Assembly: GCA_963924565.1 (NCBI GenBank)
Contig: OZ004615.1
Location: 16,058,001 to 16,122,000 of the forward strand
DNA: 64,000 nt
Reading direction: 5' to 3'
DNA from: Ascidiella aspersa
Taxonomy: Eukaryota
Shown here in pieces: positions 1,583 through 30,700 of the stretch. Made by a program: the position numbers and the translations under genes. Position 1 is the stretch's first letter. Every line of letters begins with the position of its first letter. The notes beneath the pieces are model-generated. The model was not told where the DNA came from and made no database searches. It worked only from the letters and a program-made list of their open reading frames with translations.

Positions 1583-4500
1583 ATGAATTTTAAGTTTCTC
1601 ACAGTCCTGCTTCTACTGATCTTAGTTTGCTCCCTGCTGTTTGAGATCGGAGATGCGGGAGACGACGAGAAATTGGGAAAGAAAAAGAATAGAAAGAAGA
1701 GAAAGGGAAGGAGGAAAGGAGGACGCAAGAGGAAGAACAAGACAAGCACCACTGCAGCAATAAATGTAACTCTTCCACTTGTCACAACCGTTATGCCAGA
1801 TATCTCAACAATAGTCTCGACCAAAGCCAAGATGACTACCTCAACCACCACAACAACAGGAACATCCGCGATTTCTTTGTTTCCAGCAATCGACCCTCCC
1901 ACATCCTCCGGTTCTTCAGAAGGAGACGTGCCCGACGTTTCCAGCAAAGGCCTTCTCTCACTCTTCGACTACATGTTTGGTGGCGCCGGCGACGACAACT
2001 CAACGTACGACGATGGATATGACTACGAGACCACAACCGCTGCCACGGAAGACGACTACGACGACGGTGGAGATGCTTCCTCGGCCGCAGAAGTTAGACA
2101 GGTAATGATCAATGGTAAGGTGGTTCCAATTTGCATTGAAGAACCAGTCAAGGCTCGATTCAAGGGTTATGTGAACAGCGGAGACGTCAGCCTTTGGGAC
2201 GCTTTGAACATCGCCAAGCCTGACTTGTCAAAGAGACAGAAAATCGAAATGATGAATAGCACTCTAAACGATGCAGGACTGCCGCCGATCGCTGCTTGCA
2301 CTCTGGAATCTGAACTGGACGACAATTTAGTGTCGTGCGATTTGGAGGCTGTTGCCGAATACATGATGAAATACGCCAAAGCCGGCACGCTGTCGATCGC
2401 TAGGTTTCACGCTCTAATGAAGAGCAACACAAGTGAGGCAGCAAAATTAAACGCCTCGCAGCAGATCATGGTCGACGAGGAGCTGCCCAAAATTCTGCCG
2501 TGCCTCAAAACGCCCGGAAAGGTACCGCAAAGAACGGTGGCGCTGAAATGTGATGCCGAAACCATAAAAAAAGCTTTGTTAGGGTATGTTACACGCGGAG
2601 AACTGGCGTCGACTATTCTGCTCGAACTGGCTTCCCCCGATCTAACGCCAATCGACAAGTTGAAATTAATCAATGTCGCACTGGGTGAGGCAAATTTGCC
2701 CATAATAGTTTGCACTAAAAGCGATTCAACTCTGCCAGAAACAACTACGGCGCTTGGTGGAACTGCATCTCGTATTCGAGCTACATCCCGTCCCGCTGTT
2801 CATTCAATCGCCTGTAACCCAGATTCAATCAGGGCTCTGGTTATTTCACATATTGCCAATTCCGCTTTACCGAAGTCTTTGATTCCTTCTCTTACAAATA
2901 AGAACAAATCGCTGCCAGAAAAATTGCGGATAATCAACAACGCACTACTAGAGAGCGGGCGTCCAAAAATCGTTTGCTCTGACGATGATACAAAAGTCAC
3001 AACTGTACCAACAGTCCATCCGATTCAGTGCGACCCAGAAGCCTTGCGGAAACTTGTAATTTCCTACATTAAAAATGGAATATTAACGGATGGGACGCTT
3101 ATCGGTAAACTGACCAATCAAACTTGGGCGCTATCAGAAAAGTTGAGCGTCGTTAACCGCGTGTTAGAAGAGAAGGGACTGCCGCCTCTTGCGTGTATAA
3201 CTGAGGAAACACAGTTGACAACTGTGGCAGCAATTATTTGTGACGAGGATAGCATAAGGACTCTTGTTATCTCTTACATTAAAGATGAAATTTTGCCGGG
3301 AACCATAATCGGTCAACTCATGGTTCCCGATTTGTCGCCGGCAGATAAACTTGCCACGATTAACAACGCTTTAGAGATGAAGGGTTTGCCTTCCATAGTT
3401 TGTGCTCAAAACCTGGTTGAATCAACAACACATTCTCCTCCTTCTTCGCAGCAAATAAGCTGCGACCCAGAATCAATTAAAGCATTGGTTACCTCTTACA
3501 TGAAGAATGGCGATCTTCCTTATTCGCTGATAGGTTCCCTCACAGATCCTGAAATATCGCAGGCGGATAAATTGGACACAATTAACGAAAGCCTATTGGG
3601 GGCAGGGTTGGCACCTATCGAATGCTCTTCAGCCGAATCGGAGATGGATCCCGGGTCCCATGGCCATACGCCGGGTTGCTCTCTTCCGCTAAACACAACC
3701 GATCACGGCTCAATTTTGGCATTTGCCATTCAGCTGGAAGAAGACGGAAAAATACCGGAAGGCACATACCTCCGAGTGACTAACGGCGACCTGAAAATGG
3801 AAGAGCTCTTGGCGACGCTCAGTGACGCTCACTGCGCTAAAGCGAAAGGTCCCAATCTCGGCGGATCAGTTGGTGGAAAAGACCTTGAGGTAAATCCATA
3901 CGTTGTTCGTATTGCATGTAGCTGTAAAGTTTCCATAAAGGTTGAGTTTCGATGTATAAACCAGGGGTTGGCAACCTACGGCCCGCAAATGCAATTCATG
4001 CGGCCCGACACCTCTTTAAAAATCTTGGAACCAAGCCGTTCCCCATGTTTTCAGTCTATTTTAACTACGTAAATGTTTCCTTGTCTATTGTTTATCCTTT
4101 TCCTTTTCTATTTTAACTACGTAAACAAAACCAAAATTACTGAAATACACGTTTGAACAAAGAATCACTAAAAATTGAGTTTTGTTCAGGCCCCCCTAAT
4201 GAAACGATACAGTGCCGACAGCCTGACACGTACATTACAATTTTGATTTTTGATTTTTTCATATTTTATATATTTTTTTTAATCGGAACCATATAAGCAA
4301 ATTAAATTAGGTAAGGCGAAAAGCCTCGCACGTAGTTTTAAAGTCATTCGAGCACGACTGTATTGTTGACATCACCATGCTTTATGCAGCAACTAAATAA
4401 GCTGATGGCGATTATCGATGCCGGCTACCTACCTCCTGACACATTGACAAAGCTCGCTCTGGGAGAGATCTCACAGGAGTGGTTGCGCGCCAACTTGTCC

Positions 4501-7500
4501 AAGAACGAGGATTATATCCTCTCGCAACTTCCGGCTCCGATCGCTAAACTGATAAGGGACGGCGACATGCCACCCGAGATCGTGGCGGCCATCTTCGGAG
4601 GAACAAAGAACAAAACTGAAATCATCCAGATGTTGGTCGAAGATGACGATCTGATCCGTAAGCTTCTTCCACCCCAGATTCTTCTTATGCTTGGGGTGAG
4701 TTTTACGCGCTTGTCTTTTTCATCTGCTTCGGAAATATTAAGCTAAGCGTTGATTGAGATAGGTGTAATCTAACTGGAATAATTTAAAAAATAAGTGTAC
4801 TTCAGTAATGTTTGCTTCTTCACCTCATATTGACCAATTTTTTGTAAAACGAACAGTATTTGCGGGCCAGCAATATTCTGAATGATATGCTGTATGTCGT
4901 GTTACTGTTATAAACGTTGATACAATTTGTTCGCTCTTACAACTTTTAAATTTGAAAACTTTGTGAACAGCTCATGATTTTTTTACATTTTGGTCAAATA
5001 TCAACATAATAAAAAAGTATAGAATCGATAGAAAAGCCAAAACAAATGTACGTACATTTTGAAATACTTGTACGTACATTTTGAATATTTTGTTTATTTT
5101 TATACCTTAGACAAAATCCGATTAAATTTTGCATAATTGTCATTGTTAACCTGACATGATTACAATGCCCCAAAATCAAAAACATCAAGGACCCTTCGTT
5201 TAAAAAATCAAAAACATCAACGACCTTAGTTTTATCACAAAGGAAACCTTCGTTTTATCACAAAAATAAACGTTGATACAATTTGTTCGCTCTTACAACT
5301 TTTAAATTTGAAAACTTTGTGAACAGCTCATGATTTTTTTACATTTTGGTCAAATATCAACATAATAAAAAAGTATAGAATCGATAGAAAAGCCAAAACG
5401 AATGTATGTACATTTTGAAATACTTGTACGTACATTTTGAATATTTTGTTTATTTTTATACCTTAGACAAAATCCGATTAAACTTTGCTTAATTGTCATT
5501 ATTAATCTGACATGATTACAATGCCCAAAAATCAAAAACATCAAGGACCCTTCGTTTAAAAAATCAAAAACATCAAGGACCTTCGTTTTATCACAAAGGA
5601 AAAACCTGTTCCCGATGAGCTCAAAGAACTGATGGTCAGCGGAAAGAACGCAACTGAAATCCGGGAAGAAGTGCAGAACGACGATGATCTCCTGCAGAAG
5701 TTAATGAGTCCCTCCTCCTACTTCTTCTACAACCTCTTTCAGAGTCAGATGAATCGCAACATTAACTCCGCCATCAGTATTTGCGTTATCGTGGTTCTCA
5801 CATTCGTGATGATATCCTTGGGTAAGAAAACAATGAAAGGAGAAATGCTTGACAGTATGCTGGCAAGTTTTGTCCCAGTGTCTATATATAACGTTACCAT
5901 CCCCGAAATAAAAGGCGACCCAGGCAAGACCTTTGAGAAGATTTCTTTTTAGTGTCAGTTTAATATTCGCCTATAATTTGTTTTGTGTATTTCAATGCAT
6001 TTTTATTCCTCACTACGGTAGCCTTTATGTGGGACATAACGGAGCAAATAATAATAAAATAGAACTGATTTTCCACAGAAACAACAAAGTTTTGAATTTA
6101 AATTAAATAGCGTGGTTTGATGAACTTTAAATAAAGTTATGTAGTTGTTTTAACAAATCTTGATAGAGTTATTTATTTGTTATGTAACTATACTTTTCTC
6201 AAACTATTTTTATATCTATCTATAAAGAAAGAAAACGTAAAATGTTTCAATTTGCATGATTTTAAGCGTACCAGCAGTTATAAAACAACTTTGGTTTTAA
6301 AGTCACACCAAGCTTATTCTGTCCAGGTTGCACAATGACAGTGGATAAAATAGCCGAACACGCCAAAGCGCCAAAGGGTGTGGTGATCGCGTTGTTTGCA
6401 CAGTTCGTCATCATGCCGGCGTCGGCGTTCGGTCTGACCCAAGCGTTTGACCTTGATACCTACTCTGCCATTTCGGTGCTGATTTGCGGATGTTGTCCTG
6501 GAGGCAACCTCTCCAACATGCTCGCCTACGCCTTAAACGGAGACATGAACCTTAGGTATATTATAAGTATTTGCTGGTTAGTCAGCATGTATTGGTTTCC
6601 CCTTGCATCTAAGATATTTTTCCAGGATAAATCATCAATCCACTATTGAAAATGCTTTCAGAGAATAACTTAAGTAAAAACTTAGCAGTTATTCTTGTGT
6701 ACATTCGGTCGTTATGTTCGCTTGTCTTACCGATATTCGTGGTACAATGCAAATGGAATCAATTAAGATATCTAGCTACATCAGGTAGTATTAAACAAAA
6801 CGTTTACCACTCACAGAAAAGTGTAAGGGTATTTAACACAAAAGTTATTTTAAAACTTTCTTTGGTTAAATAAACCAGTTATTTTTAGTTTTTATGTGAA
6901 AAAAAAACATTTCAGCTAAATGGCCGGAATCCTCGATCGGTTGATTTAAAAGTTTACACACAATCATTCATTAAATCTGTAGCATCCTGATGACGACTTG
7001 CTCGTCAATAATCGGACTCGGAATGATGCCGTTTTCGCTCTGGCTCTATTCGCGGTTTATAATTCCCCTCGACAGCGGAGTGATACCGTTCGAAAAGATC
7101 ATCCTGAACATCGCCCTAACTGTGCTTCCGGTGGGCATCGGAATAGCAATACGTCACTTCCGGCCGACGTGGGTCACCAACGTCATGAGGGTGTGTTTTA
7201 TTACTGTGTTGGATATCAATGTACTTTAATGACATTTTTAATCCGAAACTTGGGAGTGATTTGCACTAGCACAAGTAAGTAAAATAATTGAGTTTTCAAG
7301 ACCTGGACATAAAGGTATGCACGCAATACCACGCGTAAATCTGTACACAAACAAGCGCCACTAATGACTAACATATTTTGTACTAACTCGTGTTTGATAT
7401 TCGAAAGATTAAATTTTAAACTGTTTCTCACTTGCGATTTTAAATGGTAATAACAGTTTATCTTCTATTAGGTTTTAACTGAACTAATTGTTAAATTTAA

Positions 7501-27711: not shown

Positions 27712-30700
27712 CTAGTCCACCCAAGTATTCTTACGATTTACTGGTTTAACAGCGTCACTTGTATTTGAAGCGGGTGCGACTTCCTGAGTATGGTTGTTGC
27801 TTATCTGCGCAGATCGTCTTTTAGTAATTCGCCTTTTACGTGCTGCAGAGAACTTTTCCATTGGTGGAACAGGTTCTTTTGGAATTTTGGGAGTGATCGG
27901 TCGGATGTGTTGATCAACATTTACTGTGGATGACGACCTTTTTTGAAGTAAAAATGGAACTTCTAAGGTTTCACCTGTAGTTTTTATCGTTTTGTTACAT
28001 GGCTGAGCATATTGCCTGTTTTTCATAAGCCGTTTCCGTGCTTTAGATATATCGTCAACTAATATTGGAGTAGGTTCTTTTGATTTGTTAATGTGCGTTG
28101 TTGAGGGGGATTCATCTTTTTCAATTGGCACACGGATTTGTGAGTTTTCTGTTGACTTTTCTTTGTCTTGATTTGATTTCTGCAAAGTTTGTCGTTGTAA
28201 AATTCTCCTTTTTCGCGCTGCAGAAATCTCCTTGCTTTGCTTTGGTGGCGTCGGGACTTTGAATTTATTGATGATATTAGACTTGGTAGAACATTGCGCG
28301 TTTTTTATCGGCACAAGCAATGGTGTGTTCAATTTTGGAGCTTCTTTGTCTTGGTGCGATTTAGGCCAATTTTGACGTTGAAAAATTCTACCGTTTAGCA
28401 TTTCAGAACTATCTTTGCTTTGTTTTGGCGGCTTAGGTGCCTCGGAATGATTGATGATTTTATTCTCAGCGGAAGATTTGTCAATTTGATTTAGCACGGC
28501 ATTCTCCAAGTTCTCCAAAACTTTCCGCCCCTTGCTTACATTGTGCACAGCGGATTGTCGCTTGATGATTCTTCTTTCACGTGCCGCAGACAAACGTCCC
28601 GTCCTGCTTGGTGGAACAGGTTTTTTCGGCTTACTGCAGCTGTTTATTTCCTGATTCTCATATTGTTTTTCGGTTAAACGGTTTCCATCACACGGCTCTT
28701 CTTGCTTTAAAGCGACCATTGCCGCTTGTTTGCGTGTTAAAATTTTGTGATTAGCAGTATATAGGCCAGCTTCTAGCTGTTTTGTTGTTTGTGGTTTTAC
28801 TGTATTGACGTTTCTGCTCTTCGATATAGCATTCTTGTCTACCAGTGTTTTGTGATTTGGAATTGCGAAGCTTTCATCACTCCTGTTGTCACGGATTTCA
28901 ATTGGGATCCAACACTTGGAATCGAACGTATGCTTTTTTAAGACCGATGATTCTTTATCTGTGTTGTAAAAAATATTTCAAATTCAAACAAAAAAAATAC
29001 ATACATTGATATACACTTATGAATATTTTAATCAATTTGTGAATAATTAAACTGAATGCCGGTTTACAAACGACAAGATTTATTCGACTAACTTGATTTA
29101 TTCAGAAATTTGTTTAATTGACAATTTTTTTCACAAAAACGACAGATGATATGTGTATGTCAGTGACTCTTAATTCATTGGGTAATATAGGTACACCCTA
29201 TTTTTGGCTCTGAAGACTTTGTGCCCCCTGTTTACGTATTAAAATACGTCACACAAAACAAATAATTAGGTTAAAAAACGCAGTGGCACCTGGATGCTTT
29301 GGGTATTTTTCTTTAATTTGTACAACTTTCTGTTTGAACTCGTCGTGTTTTAGGGTAGCTGGGACAAGTGGAACAACACAGGGCCCTAATAAATAAAATT
29401 AATTGCATTATAAAATAAAACAGACTTCTTTATATCTTCATGTTGCGTGCATCAATCAAATATTATTTTTTTAAACAAAATAAACTTGAATTGCAAATGT
29501 TAACACGTACCGATTATAGGTGAGTGTCGTTTGTTGAACAATCGCAAAGGTTGCTCTTTGACTATGTTTTTAGCGTTCGGTAACTTTTGGCTTTTAGATG
29601 AGTGCTGATGGTTACTATCCACAGCTTGCCCTATCAAAACAAAATTCGTTAAAAATTGGTCATATACTTACGTTGTTATACAAAAAACAGGCCCACCGTT
29701 ATCATGGCAAAGTTTTGATCTTGTTTGTATGTTGTTTAGCTTTTGCATGTCTTTTCGAGCAAAATTCTGTAAAGGTAAATAAAAGTAGGTGTTATCAAAC
29801 GAAAATACAGAAAATAGAAAAATAATAAGATTTTAACAAACGAGACAAAAATTGAAACCACCTTAAACAACTTTGCTTGGCTGTTAATCTTATCATTCAT
29901 GTTGGTCTGAACATTGGCGCTCTAAGAAAGAAGAAAATACTGAATACCAACAAAGTCACAAATATTAGTAGCTATGTGTTACCTTTGGTTGATGTACACT
30001 TGGAGTTCTAGCCTTGATTTTTGTCGGACACGGCCCATAAGGTCGACACTATAAAAAAATGGTTGATTAGAACGGATGCAAACAATTAAGTCAAAGTTAT
30101 TTTCTGGCGAATTACTGACATGCTCTAATTGAAGGTCATCAATTAAAAGTTCGTAGGATTCGCTTGGACATTTCGGAAGTGGTCGATATATTTCTGTTGT
30201 AGGATTGGTGGGGTTTTTAGAAGAATTGTGATTTTTGCTCTGAGGATTTTCACTTCCTCCTTTGGCTGAAAGTAAAATTAGAAACATTAAATCCGTTTTT
30301 TTATTAATTTTGTGATACTTAACTGAGCGACGAGGTTTGGTGGAAACCACAGATCTGAGATAGAGACACAACGAACATAGTGATTGGCATTCTGTCGATG
30401 TGAAATCTGTCGATCTCAGACGCAGAATACCAAGTGTAGTATCAACAAACAACGGGAAATCAAGCCTTGATACAACACCAAAAACATAACAATTAGAATA
30501 TTATAGTAAAGCATACACTACCCACTGCTGTCAAACACTTACAAACAACTTTTTCAAAACGATTAGATTTATTCTCTGAAATATATTAATCAAAAACTAA
30601 AATTACAAATGGCTTTGCGTGTATATTTACATCTATTGTTCGGCGTTTACCTGTTACAGAGATCTTATCTGCTTCAATTGATTTTTTTTCTTTCAGTTTC

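What the first reader, a model, noticed from the sequence alone, without database searches (positions are those of the whole stretch)
2132..3835. Unrecognised ~55-aa Cys-bracketed helical repeat domain (7-8 copies)
Seen in sequence: each copy begins and ends with Cys and has no internal Cys, e.g. [56 protein letters not shown] and [55 protein letters not shown]. Conserved positions are Y-x-x-x-G-x-L, (D/E)KL-x-x-IN-x-x-L and GLP-x-I-x-C, and the linkers are Thr/Ser-rich. Copies are strongly diverged at DNA level yet keep the hydrophobic pattern, and all lie in one exon, which implies old intra-exonic amplification under selection. Inference: each copy is a disulfide-clasped three-helix module, possibly binding lipid or sterol, arranged as beads on an O-glycosylated string.
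Basis: partly seen in the sequence, partly recalled or inferred. Interest (0 to 1): 0.8.

Follow-up and report, generated by a model that had tools for sequence, protein, structure and literature searches.

The report
Unnamed disulfide-bracketed three-helix repeat module
A sea-squirt (tunicate) gene for an SLC10-type membrane transporter carries, on its outside-facing front end, seven to eight copies of a small, previously unnamed 55-residue helical module bracketed by two cysteines; the module is real, folds confidently in prediction, has no database name and is found in only a handful of unnamed relatives, but what it binds or does is still unknown.

Summary
Window 2132-3835 (+) lies in one open exon (1583-3889) and encodes eight Cys-to-Cys segments with no internal Cys. 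Seven are homologous: a leave-one-out HMM scores them 21-74 bits, against at most 10 for shuffles. The eighth is divergent but predicted to have the same three-helix layout.

A single module predicts as a compact three-helix unit (pLDDT 89.8). Two modules together give pTM 0.35 with disordered linkers, which fits beads on a string.

An exhaustive HMMER search of 1.84 billion proteins found six true relatives. All are unnamed ORFs with signal-peptide-like N-termini and 2-4 Cys-bracketed modules. All map back only to this locus in the window's genome.

One relative is exon 1 of the orthologue on a metagenome contig. There the same exon order leads into SLC10 (PF01758) exons. Its modules are 22-28% identical to ours, while the transporter exons are 72-82% identical.

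RNA reads cover the exons on one strand only.

Conserved positions are core, capping or Cys residues, and the surfaces vary. I read the array as a structural display stalk. Lipid or sterol binding has no support. It is a new domain family of a familiar kind, of moderate interest.

The parts
1583..1651 (+). Start codon and signal-peptide-like N-terminus ([23 protein letters not shown]...)
   Evidence: Read from the sequence. The N-terminus is 53% identical in the orthologue L021. No signal-peptide predictor was available.
1664..1741 (+). Polybasic stretch (aa 28-53, 65% Lys/Arg)
   Evidence: A similar stretch follows the signal peptide in P0002, P0007 and P0009.
1742..1987 (+). Thr/Ser-rich mucin-like stretch
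   Evidence: Weak sub-threshold Pfam Mucin hit (19 bits, cut-off 34.7).
1988..2080 (+). Acidic Asp/Tyr-rich stretch (aa 136-166, 39% Asp/Glu; Tyr flanked by acidic residues)
   Evidence: Tyrosine sulfation is my inference only.
2132..2299 (+). Module R1 (aa 184-239)
   Evidence: Leave-one-out HMM 30.2 bits. Best match of the second module of the P0001 family.
2336..2503 (+). Module R2 (aa 252-307), the most divergent canonical copy
   Evidence: Leave-one-out HMM 21.0 bits.
2549..2713 (+). Module R3 (aa 323-377)
   Evidence: Leave-one-out HMM 49.8 bits.
2813..2977 (+). Module R4 (aa 411-465)
   Evidence: Leave-one-out HMM 52.7 bits.
3029..3196 (+). Module R5 (aa 483-538)
   Evidence: Leave-one-out HMM 57.6 bits.
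3239..3403 (+). Module R6 (aa 553-607)
   Evidence: Leave-one-out HMM 74.3 bits.
3461..3625 (+). Module R7 (aa 627-681), the copy that was modelled
   Evidence: Leave-one-out HMM 66.2 bits. AlphaFold2 pLDDT 89.8, helices 3-15, 23-27 and 34-47.
3677..3835 (+). Divergent eighth Cys-bracketed segment R8 (aa 699-751)
   Evidence: Not significant by HMM or hhalign. Predicted helices 89-101, 109-114 and 120-135 of the construct at pLDDT 82-85, the same layout as R7. Its start (CSL...) and the helix-1 pattern are conserved in the orthologue.
3836..3889 (+). End of exon 1; donor GAG|GTAAAT at 3889/3890
   Evidence: The rest of the ORF (3890-4072) is intron read-through.
3953..4007 (.). High-copy interspersed repeat inside intron 1
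   Evidence: Summed contig depth is 18761 in that bin against about 109 beside it, with many loose ends.
4390..4695 (+). Exon 2: two Cys-less helical units of about 45-50 aa with a similar helix-G-x-hP-helix-...-LP pattern
   Evidence: Canonical acceptor and donor, conserved in L021. 53% identical to the orthologue. Homology to R1-R7 not shown (hhalign E 0.025). RNA reads present.
5599..5856 (+). Exon 3 (limits approximate): a third Cys-less unit, then the first transmembrane helix
   Evidence: 55-57% identical to L021. RNA reads present. Boundaries inferred from frame and AG/GT only.
6326..6559 (+). SLC10 exon (PF01758 SBF)
   Evidence: Pfam 84.5 bits, cut-off 24.3. Matches NTCP chains at residues 43-118, E 1.9e-23. 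82% identical to L021. RNA reads present.
6981..7193 (+). Next SLC10 exon (PF01758 SBF)
   Evidence: Pfam 39.6 bits. 72-74% identical to L021.

Best explanation
The repeats are a real, previously unnamed extracellular protein domain that I found only in this tunicate gene and six unnamed ORFs.

Each copy of about 55 residues folds on its own into a small three-helix bundle: a 13-residue helix, a 5-residue helix and a 14-residue helix. A conserved G-L-P-x-[IL] tail leads back to the start. There the first and last residues, both Cys, most likely form an intramodule disulfide.

Seven canonical copies and one divergent copy are strung on flexible Ser/Thr/Pro-rich linkers, which are probably O-glycosylated. 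They sit between an N-terminal polybasic, mucin-like and acidic region and three Cys-less helical units that lead directly into TM1 of an SLC10 (sodium/bile-acid symporter family) transporter. The array therefore faces the outside of the cell.

Only core, helix-cap, Gly/Pro and Cys positions are conserved. Surfaces, net charge (+5 to -6) and copy number (2, 4, 4, 8 between species) change freely. I therefore take the array to work mainly as a protease-resistant, semi-rigid stalk or display scaffold with fast-evolving surfaces, and not as a conserved small-molecule pocket.

Shown here: the repeats, their homology, the predicted fold, the absence of a named family, the conserved gene order with SLC10 and transcription. 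Inferred: the disulfide, the glycosylation, the single transcript and the stalk function.

The confidence given is for the whole statement. The structural part alone I put at about 0.85 and the stalk function at about 0.4.
For: - Repeat homology: leave-one-out HMM 21-74 bits against at most 10 for shuffles.
- Fold: pLDDT 89.8, pTM 0.68, three helices. The same layout appears for R7 and R8 in a two-row model. Linkers fall below pLDDT 50 and pTM is 0.35, so no inter-module packing is predicted. The only strands are the residues flanking the two Cys of R7.
- Relatives: ten hits at E<=1e-3 in 1.84e9 proteins. Six are true relatives with 55-57-residue Cys brackets behind signal-peptide-like N-termini.
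- All of them match only this locus in the 308-Mb genome.
- Orthologous contig L021 keeps the order exon 1, exon 2, exon 3, SLC10 exons. Identities are 22-28%, 53%, 55-57% and 72-82%.
- Splice sites are canonical in both species.
- RNA reads fall on exons only, all in one direction.
- The SLC10 exon aligns to NTCP residues 43-118. In solved NTCP structures the N-terminus is extracellular (my own knowledge).
- Conservation: hydrophobic positions 6, 10, 13, 14, 19, 27, 38, 40, 41, 45, 50 and 53 form one face per helix. The other conserved positions are Cys1/55, G17, S/T33, K37, N42, G/N49 and P51. The rest run at about 3 bits of entropy.
- The four P0003 modules form their own clade (99/94), which indicates independent amplification.
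Against: - The disulfide was not measured, because no coordinates are returned. Secretoglobins use terminal Cys for interchain bonds, so inter-module or interchain pairing is not excluded.
- No splice-junction read was listed. Only 27 reads were laid, from 6% of the run, so one transcript spanning the modules and SLC10 is inferred and not shown.
- A stalk function is an argument from what is not conserved. K37 and N42 are nearly invariant polar residues that could be functional.
- Fast evolution fits a recognition role as well as a spacer role.
- P0003 may be a free secreted four-module protein, which would argue that the module has a function of its own. Its genomic context could not be read (look-up of encoding contigs closed).
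- The AlphaFold models rest on shallow alignments of 7 and 2 rows.
Confidence: 0.55

Rival explanations
1. Ligand-capture antenna. The modules bind amphipathic small molecules such as bile-salt-like or sulfated sterols and hand them to the SLC10 pore. This would resemble the way the N-terminal domain of NPC1 hands cholesterol to its membrane domain.
For: The array is encoded directly upstream of SLC10 exons, and this arrangement is conserved in a second species. The helices are amphipathic. From my own knowledge, SLC10 members carry bile salts and steroid sulfates, and ascidians use a sulfated sterol as a sperm attractant. The polybasic N-terminus could attract sulfated compounds.
Against: A 55-residue three-helix unit whose conserved hydrophobic residues all fit one small core leaves no conserved pocket. 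No conserved aromatic or polar cluster sits on the surface. No saposin, secretoglobin or other lipid-binding fold appears among the listed structural matches. Modules are only 22-28% identical between orthologues while the transporter is 72-82% identical, which is unlike a site tuned to one ligand.
Confidence: 0.12
2. Recognition or adhesion array. The variable module surfaces bind a protein or glycan partner, such as matrix or tunic components, microbes, gametes or other cells. Fast sequence change and copy-number change would reflect co-evolution with that partner.
For: Hypervariable surfaces on a conserved scaffold. Net charge per module ranges from +5 to -6. Copy number differs between relatives (2, 4, 4, 8) and P0003 amplified independently. 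Two of four exon-1 polymorphisms seen are non-synonymous. Flanking polybasic and acidic Tyr-rich stretches are typical of glycan or protein contacts.
Against: No partner is known and no population data were available. The same pattern is expected of a mere spacer under relaxed constraint. The gene is single-copy in the genome, unlike most fast-evolving recognition families.
Confidence: 0.25
3. The terminal cysteines do not clasp each module. Instead they link neighbouring modules or two chains, as in secretoglobin dimers, giving a cross-linked rod or a covalent dimer of the transporter.
For: Secretoglobins are small helical units with Cys near both ends that form interchain bonds (my own knowledge). 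No Cys-Cys distance could be measured here.
Against: The module model orders both termini (pLDDT 86-87). It pairs the residues next to the two Cys of the same module in a small beta-bridge. There is no confident inter-module packing (pTM 0.35). The bracket spacing is kept at 54-57 residues while linker length varies from 12 to 40 residues, which is as expected for an intramodule bond.
Confidence: 0.08
4. Not a functional feature: a decaying or non-coding ORF, or an assembly artefact.
For: None found.
Against: The frame is open for 2307 nt. The hydrophobic pattern is kept under saturated synonymous change. Strand-specific RNA reads are present. The same DNA occurs in independent runs. An orthologue in another species keeps the same architecture.
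Confidence: 0.01

Closest known systems
Prosaposin / saposin-like (SAPLIP) tandem modules
   Same: Several small, all-helical, disulfide-stabilised modules strung along one secreted or luminal polypeptide with linkers between them.
   Different: Saposins have about 80 residues, 4-5 helices and six Cys in three disulfides, and they bind lipids. This module has 55 residues, three helices and two Cys. It has no Pfam saposin match and no saposin among the listed structural matches.
Secretoglobin (uteroglobin) fold
   Same: A small helical extracellular unit with Cys close to both termini. Secretoglobins are linked to steroid and hydrophobic-ligand binding, which echoes the SLC10 context.
   Different: Secretoglobins have about 70 residues and four helices. 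Their terminal Cys join two chains, and the ligand cavity exists only in the dimer. No sequence match and no listed structural match to them here.
Generic three-helix bundles (pieces of CARD/death domains, designed minibinders)
Mucin-type stalks with small folded modules on membrane proteins (for example EGF, LDLa or sushi repeats separated by Ser/Thr/Pro linkers)
   Same: The architecture is the same: signal peptide, Ser/Thr/Pro-rich linkers, small disulfide-bonded repeats and a membrane anchor. I expect it to work in the same way, as a spacer or display stalk.
   Different: Those modules are beta-rich or knotted with 4-6 Cys and are found throughout animals. This one is helical with a single Cys pair and was detected only in a handful of unnamed ORFs.
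SLC10 family transporters (NTCP, ASBT, SOAT; orphan members with longer N-termini)
   Same: The membrane part downstream is a clear SLC10/SBF domain. Its N-terminus is outside in solved NTCP structures (my own knowledge).
   Different: Solved NTCP and ASBT-type chains are 300-354 residues long and have no such ectodomain. Of at least nine SLC10 loci in this genome, only this one carries the modules. A paper counted 16 putative SLC10 sequences in Ciona but describes no such ectodomain (PMC3540847).

Membership tests
Any Pfam-A family (module region) | hmmscan match at or above the family's gathering score | tested here: not met
   For the whole 829-aa ORF at E<=10, the only hits were Mucin (19 bits, cut-off 34.7, in the N-terminal stretch) and YibX (E 0.18). 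The six relatives have no family either.
Saposin-like (SAPLIP) | About 80 residues with six conserved Cys (three disulfides) and 4-5 helices | tested here: not met
   Each 53-56-residue copy has two Cys and none inside. Three helices are predicted. No Pfam saposin hit.
Secretoglobin / uteroglobin | Four-helix monomer of about 70 residues | tested here: not met
   Three helices in 55 residues. No Pfam hit. None among the top structural matches.
Secretoglobin / uteroglobin | Terminal Cys form interchain disulfides in an antiparallel dimer | not testable with these tools
   No coordinates or multimer prediction were available. Indirect evidence favours an intramodule bond.
Death-fold (CARD), the top structural hit | Six-helix bundle of about 90 residues matched over the whole domain, well above background | tested here: not met
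The new Cys-bracketed three-helix module family (defined here) | Two Cys 54-57 residues apart with none between, plus the core pattern (positions 6, 10, 13, 14, 19, 27, 38, 41, 45, 50, 53), K37 and N42 | tested here: met
   R1-R7 meet it. 21 of 22 modules from seven proteins keep both Cys. R8 keeps the bracket and helix layout but not the sequence pattern.
The new Cys-bracketed three-helix module family (defined here) | Intramodule C1-C55 disulfide | not testable with these tools
   The models give no coordinates. Supporting evidence is only ordered termini and a beta-bridge next to both Cys.
SLC10 / SBF transporter (the host protein) | PF01758 match above the cut-off and similarity to solved SLC10 structures | tested here: met
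   84.5 and 39.6 bits against a cut-off of 24.3. NTCP residues 43-118 matched at E 1.9e-23.
SLC10 / SBF transporter (the host protein) | Modules and SLC10 domain lie on one transcript | tested here: inconclusive
   Same-strand RNA reads fall on exons 1, 2, 3 and the SBF exon, with none in the introns, but no junction was listed. Exon order and canonical splice sites are conserved in the orthologue.

The most novel reading that the evidence does not exclude
The array is a substrate-capturing or sensing antenna of a tunicate-specific SLC10 protein. The polybasic tip and the helical modules would bind sulfated sterols or sulfated glycans outside the cell and either feed them to the transporter or gate it (a transceptor). 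This would be the first SLC10 member with a built-in extracellular ligand-binding apparatus, possibly tied to the sulfated-sterol signalling that ascidians use between gametes.
Probability: 0.08. Interest if true: 0.8.

Novelty: new variant of a known kind. Interest (0 to 1): 0.5.

Why it matters
If it holds, this is a new extracellular domain family that deserves a database entry. It is one of the smallest disulfide-closed three-helix folds, so it is easy to express and to solve.

It also marks a lineage-restricted elaboration of an SLC10 transporter. In vertebrates that family carries bile salts and steroid sulfates and has no large ectodomain in its solved members. The finding therefore gives a concrete handle for asking what non-vertebrate chordate SLC10 proteins transport or sense.

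Its practical weight is limited. The family is rare, with six relatives among 1.84 billion representative proteins. Its function is unknown, and nothing here points to a new mechanism.

Tried and rejected
- **Word-index protein search** with the module region, candidates of 456-1450 aa: blank. The same search with the two-module family alignment A2 returned only its own members.
- **Spurious hits of the exhaustive search.**
  - P0004 and P0010 are low-complexity repeats.
  - P0005 is a 2498-aa HEAT/NBAS-like helical repeat protein that matches only module positions 21-46.
  - P0008 is a roughly 30-aa YI-x-x-G-x-LS repeat that matches only positions 7-38.
  - I do not count any of these as relatives.
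- **R8 and the exon-2 units as sequence homologues of R1-R7:** HMM scores of 1-3 bits and hhalign E 0.025-0.034 with probability under 2%. Not shown. Only the layout of R8 was supported by a model.
- **Module tree:** mostly unresolved, with 1 of 19 branches well supported. It cannot order the duplications in this gene.
- **Literature** on SLC10 in Ciona and ascidians describes no such ectodomain.
- **Organism.** That it is a tunicate rests on a cellulose-synthase exon match and a GH6 exon match about 3 kb apart on one strand.
Full report
**1. What is there**

The window has one long open frame on the + strand, 1583..4072, of 829 aa. Within it, every Cys of aa 184-751 falls into eight pairs spaced 52-55 residues apart, with none inside a pair. 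In DNA these pairs run from 2132 to 3835, exactly the finder's limits, and both quoted peptides are copies R5 and R7.

Seven copies (R1-R7) are homologous beyond doubt. An HMM built from any six scores the seventh at 21.0-74.3 bits, whereas 500 shuffles of that copy never exceed 10.0 bits. Pairwise protein identity is 18-51%, and R4-R7 are the closest set at 45-51%.

DNA identity between copies is 35-61%. Third codon positions under identical residues agree in only 27-56% of cases, so the duplications are old and the pattern is held by selection.

The eighth segment (aa 699-751) is Cys-bracketed but is not recognised by the HMM or by hhalign (E 0.034).

Tandem Repeats Finder sees nothing at the DNA level in this stretch, as expected for such divergence.

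**2. Gene context**

The frame begins with a signal-peptide-like sequence. It continues with a 65% Lys/Arg stretch, a Thr-rich mucin-like stretch and an Asp/Tyr-rich acidic stretch before the modules.

Linkers between modules are 12-33 residues long and 38% Ser/Thr/Pro, against 19% inside the modules.

Exon 1 ends at a canonical donor, GAG|GTAAAT, at 3889/3890. The rest of the ORF is intron and holds a high-copy repeat at 3953-4007.

Exon 2 (4390-4695) and the start of exon 3 (from about 5599) encode three Cys-less helical units with a related look (h-x-x-L-h-x-x-G-x-h-P ... LP). Their homology to R1-R7 is not demonstrable (hhalign E 0.025).

Exon 3 then runs into a hydrophobic helix. The following exons are SLC10/SBF, with PF01758 at 84.5 and 39.6 bits. 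They align to residues 43-118 of solved NTCP chains at E 1.9e-23. In solved NTCP structures the N-terminus is extracellular (my own knowledge). With the signal peptide, this places the whole array outside the cell.

I handled the spliced gene exon by exon only.

**3. Is it expressed and conserved?**

A stranded RNA-Seq run with the same species label gave 27 reads from the 6% of the run that was read. All lie in one direction. They cover exon 1 (modules included), exon 2, exon 3 and the first SBF exon, and none lie in the introns. No junction reached the listing threshold. Transcription is therefore shown, and a single transcript is inferred.

A metagenome contig (L021, 35 kb) carries the orthologue. 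Its exon-1 ORF (P0002) is followed, in the same order and strand, by exon 2 (53% identical), exon 3 (55-57%) and the SBF exons (82% and 72-74%). Splice sites are canonical at the same places. Its module region is only 22-28% identical to ours and has three canonical modules plus an R8-like one. The ectodomain thus evolves several times faster than the transporter while keeping its architecture.

**4. Fold**

R7, with the seven copies as the alignment, predicts at mean pLDDT 89.8 and pTM 0.68. It has helices at 3-15, 23-27 and 34-47 and an ordered tail at 48-55.

A 150-residue construct (R7, linker, R8, end of exon 1; two-row alignment) reproduces the R7 helices. It gives R8 the same layout: helices of 13, 6 and 16 residues at pLDDT 82-85. 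The linker and the tail fall below pLDDT 50, and pTM is only 0.35, so no packing between modules is predicted.

The only beta-strands in that model are the three residues before the first Cys of R7 and the three residues ending in its last Cys. The two ends of a module therefore meet, which is compatible with a C1-C55 disulfide. I could not measure the distance, because the tools return no coordinates.

Across 22 modules from seven proteins, both Cys are kept in 21.

**5. Is it known?**

- Pfam gives nothing for the modules or for any relative.
- PDB sequences give nothing with the protein or with the profile.
- Foldseek against the PDB has no match at E<=0.001.
- An exhaustive HMMER search of 1.84 billion representative proteins with the seven-copy profile found ten proteins at E<=1e-3.

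Six of these ten are true relatives: P0001, P0002, P0003, P0006, P0007 and P0009. They have signal-peptide-like N-termini and often a basic stretch. They carry two to four segments bracketed by Cys 54-59 residues apart, apart from one P0007 module that lacks the closing Cys. The other four are low-complexity or other helical repeats that match only part of the module.

Searched back against the window's 308-Mb genome, the profile and all relatives hit only this locus. The genome nevertheless has at least nine other SLC10 loci.

I found no paper describing an SLC10 protein with such an ectodomain. One paper counts 16 putative SLC10 sequences in Ciona (PMC3540847).

The genome is a tunicate's. 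A cellulose-synthase exon match and a GH6 exon match lie about 3 kb apart on one strand. That is the tunicate CesA hallmark (my own knowledge) and agrees with other notes of this scan.

**6. How it probably works**

In the 22-module alignment the conserved positions fall into four groups:
- one hydrophobic face per helix (positions 6, 10, 13, 14; 27; 38, 40, 41, 45), together with L19, L50 and I/L53;
- helix caps (D/N2-x-E4, S/T33);
- G17, G/N49 and P51;
- the two Cys, plus two polar residues, K37 and N42.

All other positions are close to random. Net charge per module runs from +5 to -6.

Copy number differs between relatives (2, 4, 4, 8). The four modules of P0003 form their own well-supported clade (99/94), which indicates independent amplification; the rest of the tree is unresolved.

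This is the signature of a scaffold whose fold matters more than any one surface. I therefore favour a semi-rigid, probably glycosylated stalk or display array. It would hold the charged N-terminal region away from the membrane and offer fast-changing surfaces.

A recognition role is the main rival. Interchain or inter-module disulfides remain a minor possibility.

**7. Verdict**

It is unproven on the disulfide and unsupported on lipid binding.

This is a new domain family of a familiar kind (small disulfide-stabilised extracellular repeats). It was detected only in this tunicate gene and six unnamed ORFs, one of which is the orthologue's exon 1, and here it is attached to an SLC10 transporter. 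I score interest as moderate.

**8. Limits**

- InterPro member databases other than Pfam, and profile-profile searches against Pfam or the PDB, were not available.
- Both structure models rest on shallow alignments.
- The scan's note s1-790853 on the same window had already flagged the SLC10-ectodomain fusion.

Noticed in passing
window 4910-5602: A 356-bp unit is present 1.9 times in tandem at 97% identity inside intron 2. It holds near-identical 64-aa minus-strand ORFs (4994-5188 and 5350-5544) and looks like a recent intronic duplication.
   Followed up: no
window 3953-4007: A short element in intron 1 with summed contig depth of about 18,761, against about 109 for the flanks, and many loose ends. 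It is a high-copy interspersed repeat of this genome and is also seen in the run labelled organism B.
   Followed up: partly
window 1664-1741 and 1988-2080: A 26-residue stretch that is 65% Lys/Arg lies right after the signal peptide and recurs in P0002, P0007 and P0009. An Asp/Tyr-rich stretch follows ([14 protein letters not shown]) that looks like tyrosine-sulfation sites. These could be glycan-binding or charge-pairing elements of the ectodomain.
   Followed up: partly
window 4390-4695 and about 5599-5700: Three Cys-less helical units of about 45 aa sit next to the membrane (for example ...[26 protein letters not shown] and ...[25 protein letters not shown]). They are 53-57% conserved in the orthologue, about twice as well as the Cys-bracketed modules.
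   Followed up: partly
G000:C5:19610700-19614090: A cellulose synthase (PF03552) exon match and a GH6 (PF01341) exon match lie about 3 kb apart on the same strand. This is the tunicate CesA hallmark and identifies the genome as a tunicate's.
   Followed up: partly
G000, several contigs: There are at least nine further SLC10/SBF loci, for example C3:19784820, C2:12220406, C3:19360467, C8:12734011, C9:7320992-7331377, C4:14326261-14347206 and C4:34803636. Two matches contain an in-frame stop. None carries the module.
   Followed up: no
window 27712-28719 (-): A 335-aa ORF rich in Lys, Ser and Pro has about four internal repeats of a motif like SAARKRRI-x-KRQ preceded by PKPPKQSK-like stretches. 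It was not examined.
   Followed up: no
window 2167, 2765, 2826, 2935, 6406: Five single-base differences between the assembly and the RNA or DNA runs. Of the four in exon 1, two are silent (G195, I451) and two change residues: A395T in a linker and S415L in module R4.
   Followed up: partly
P0003 (305 aa, metagenome ORF): This four-module relative ends two residues after its last module and sits on contigs of 1.2-6.4 kb. It may be a free secreted protein made only of these modules, not the front end of a transporter.
   Followed up: no
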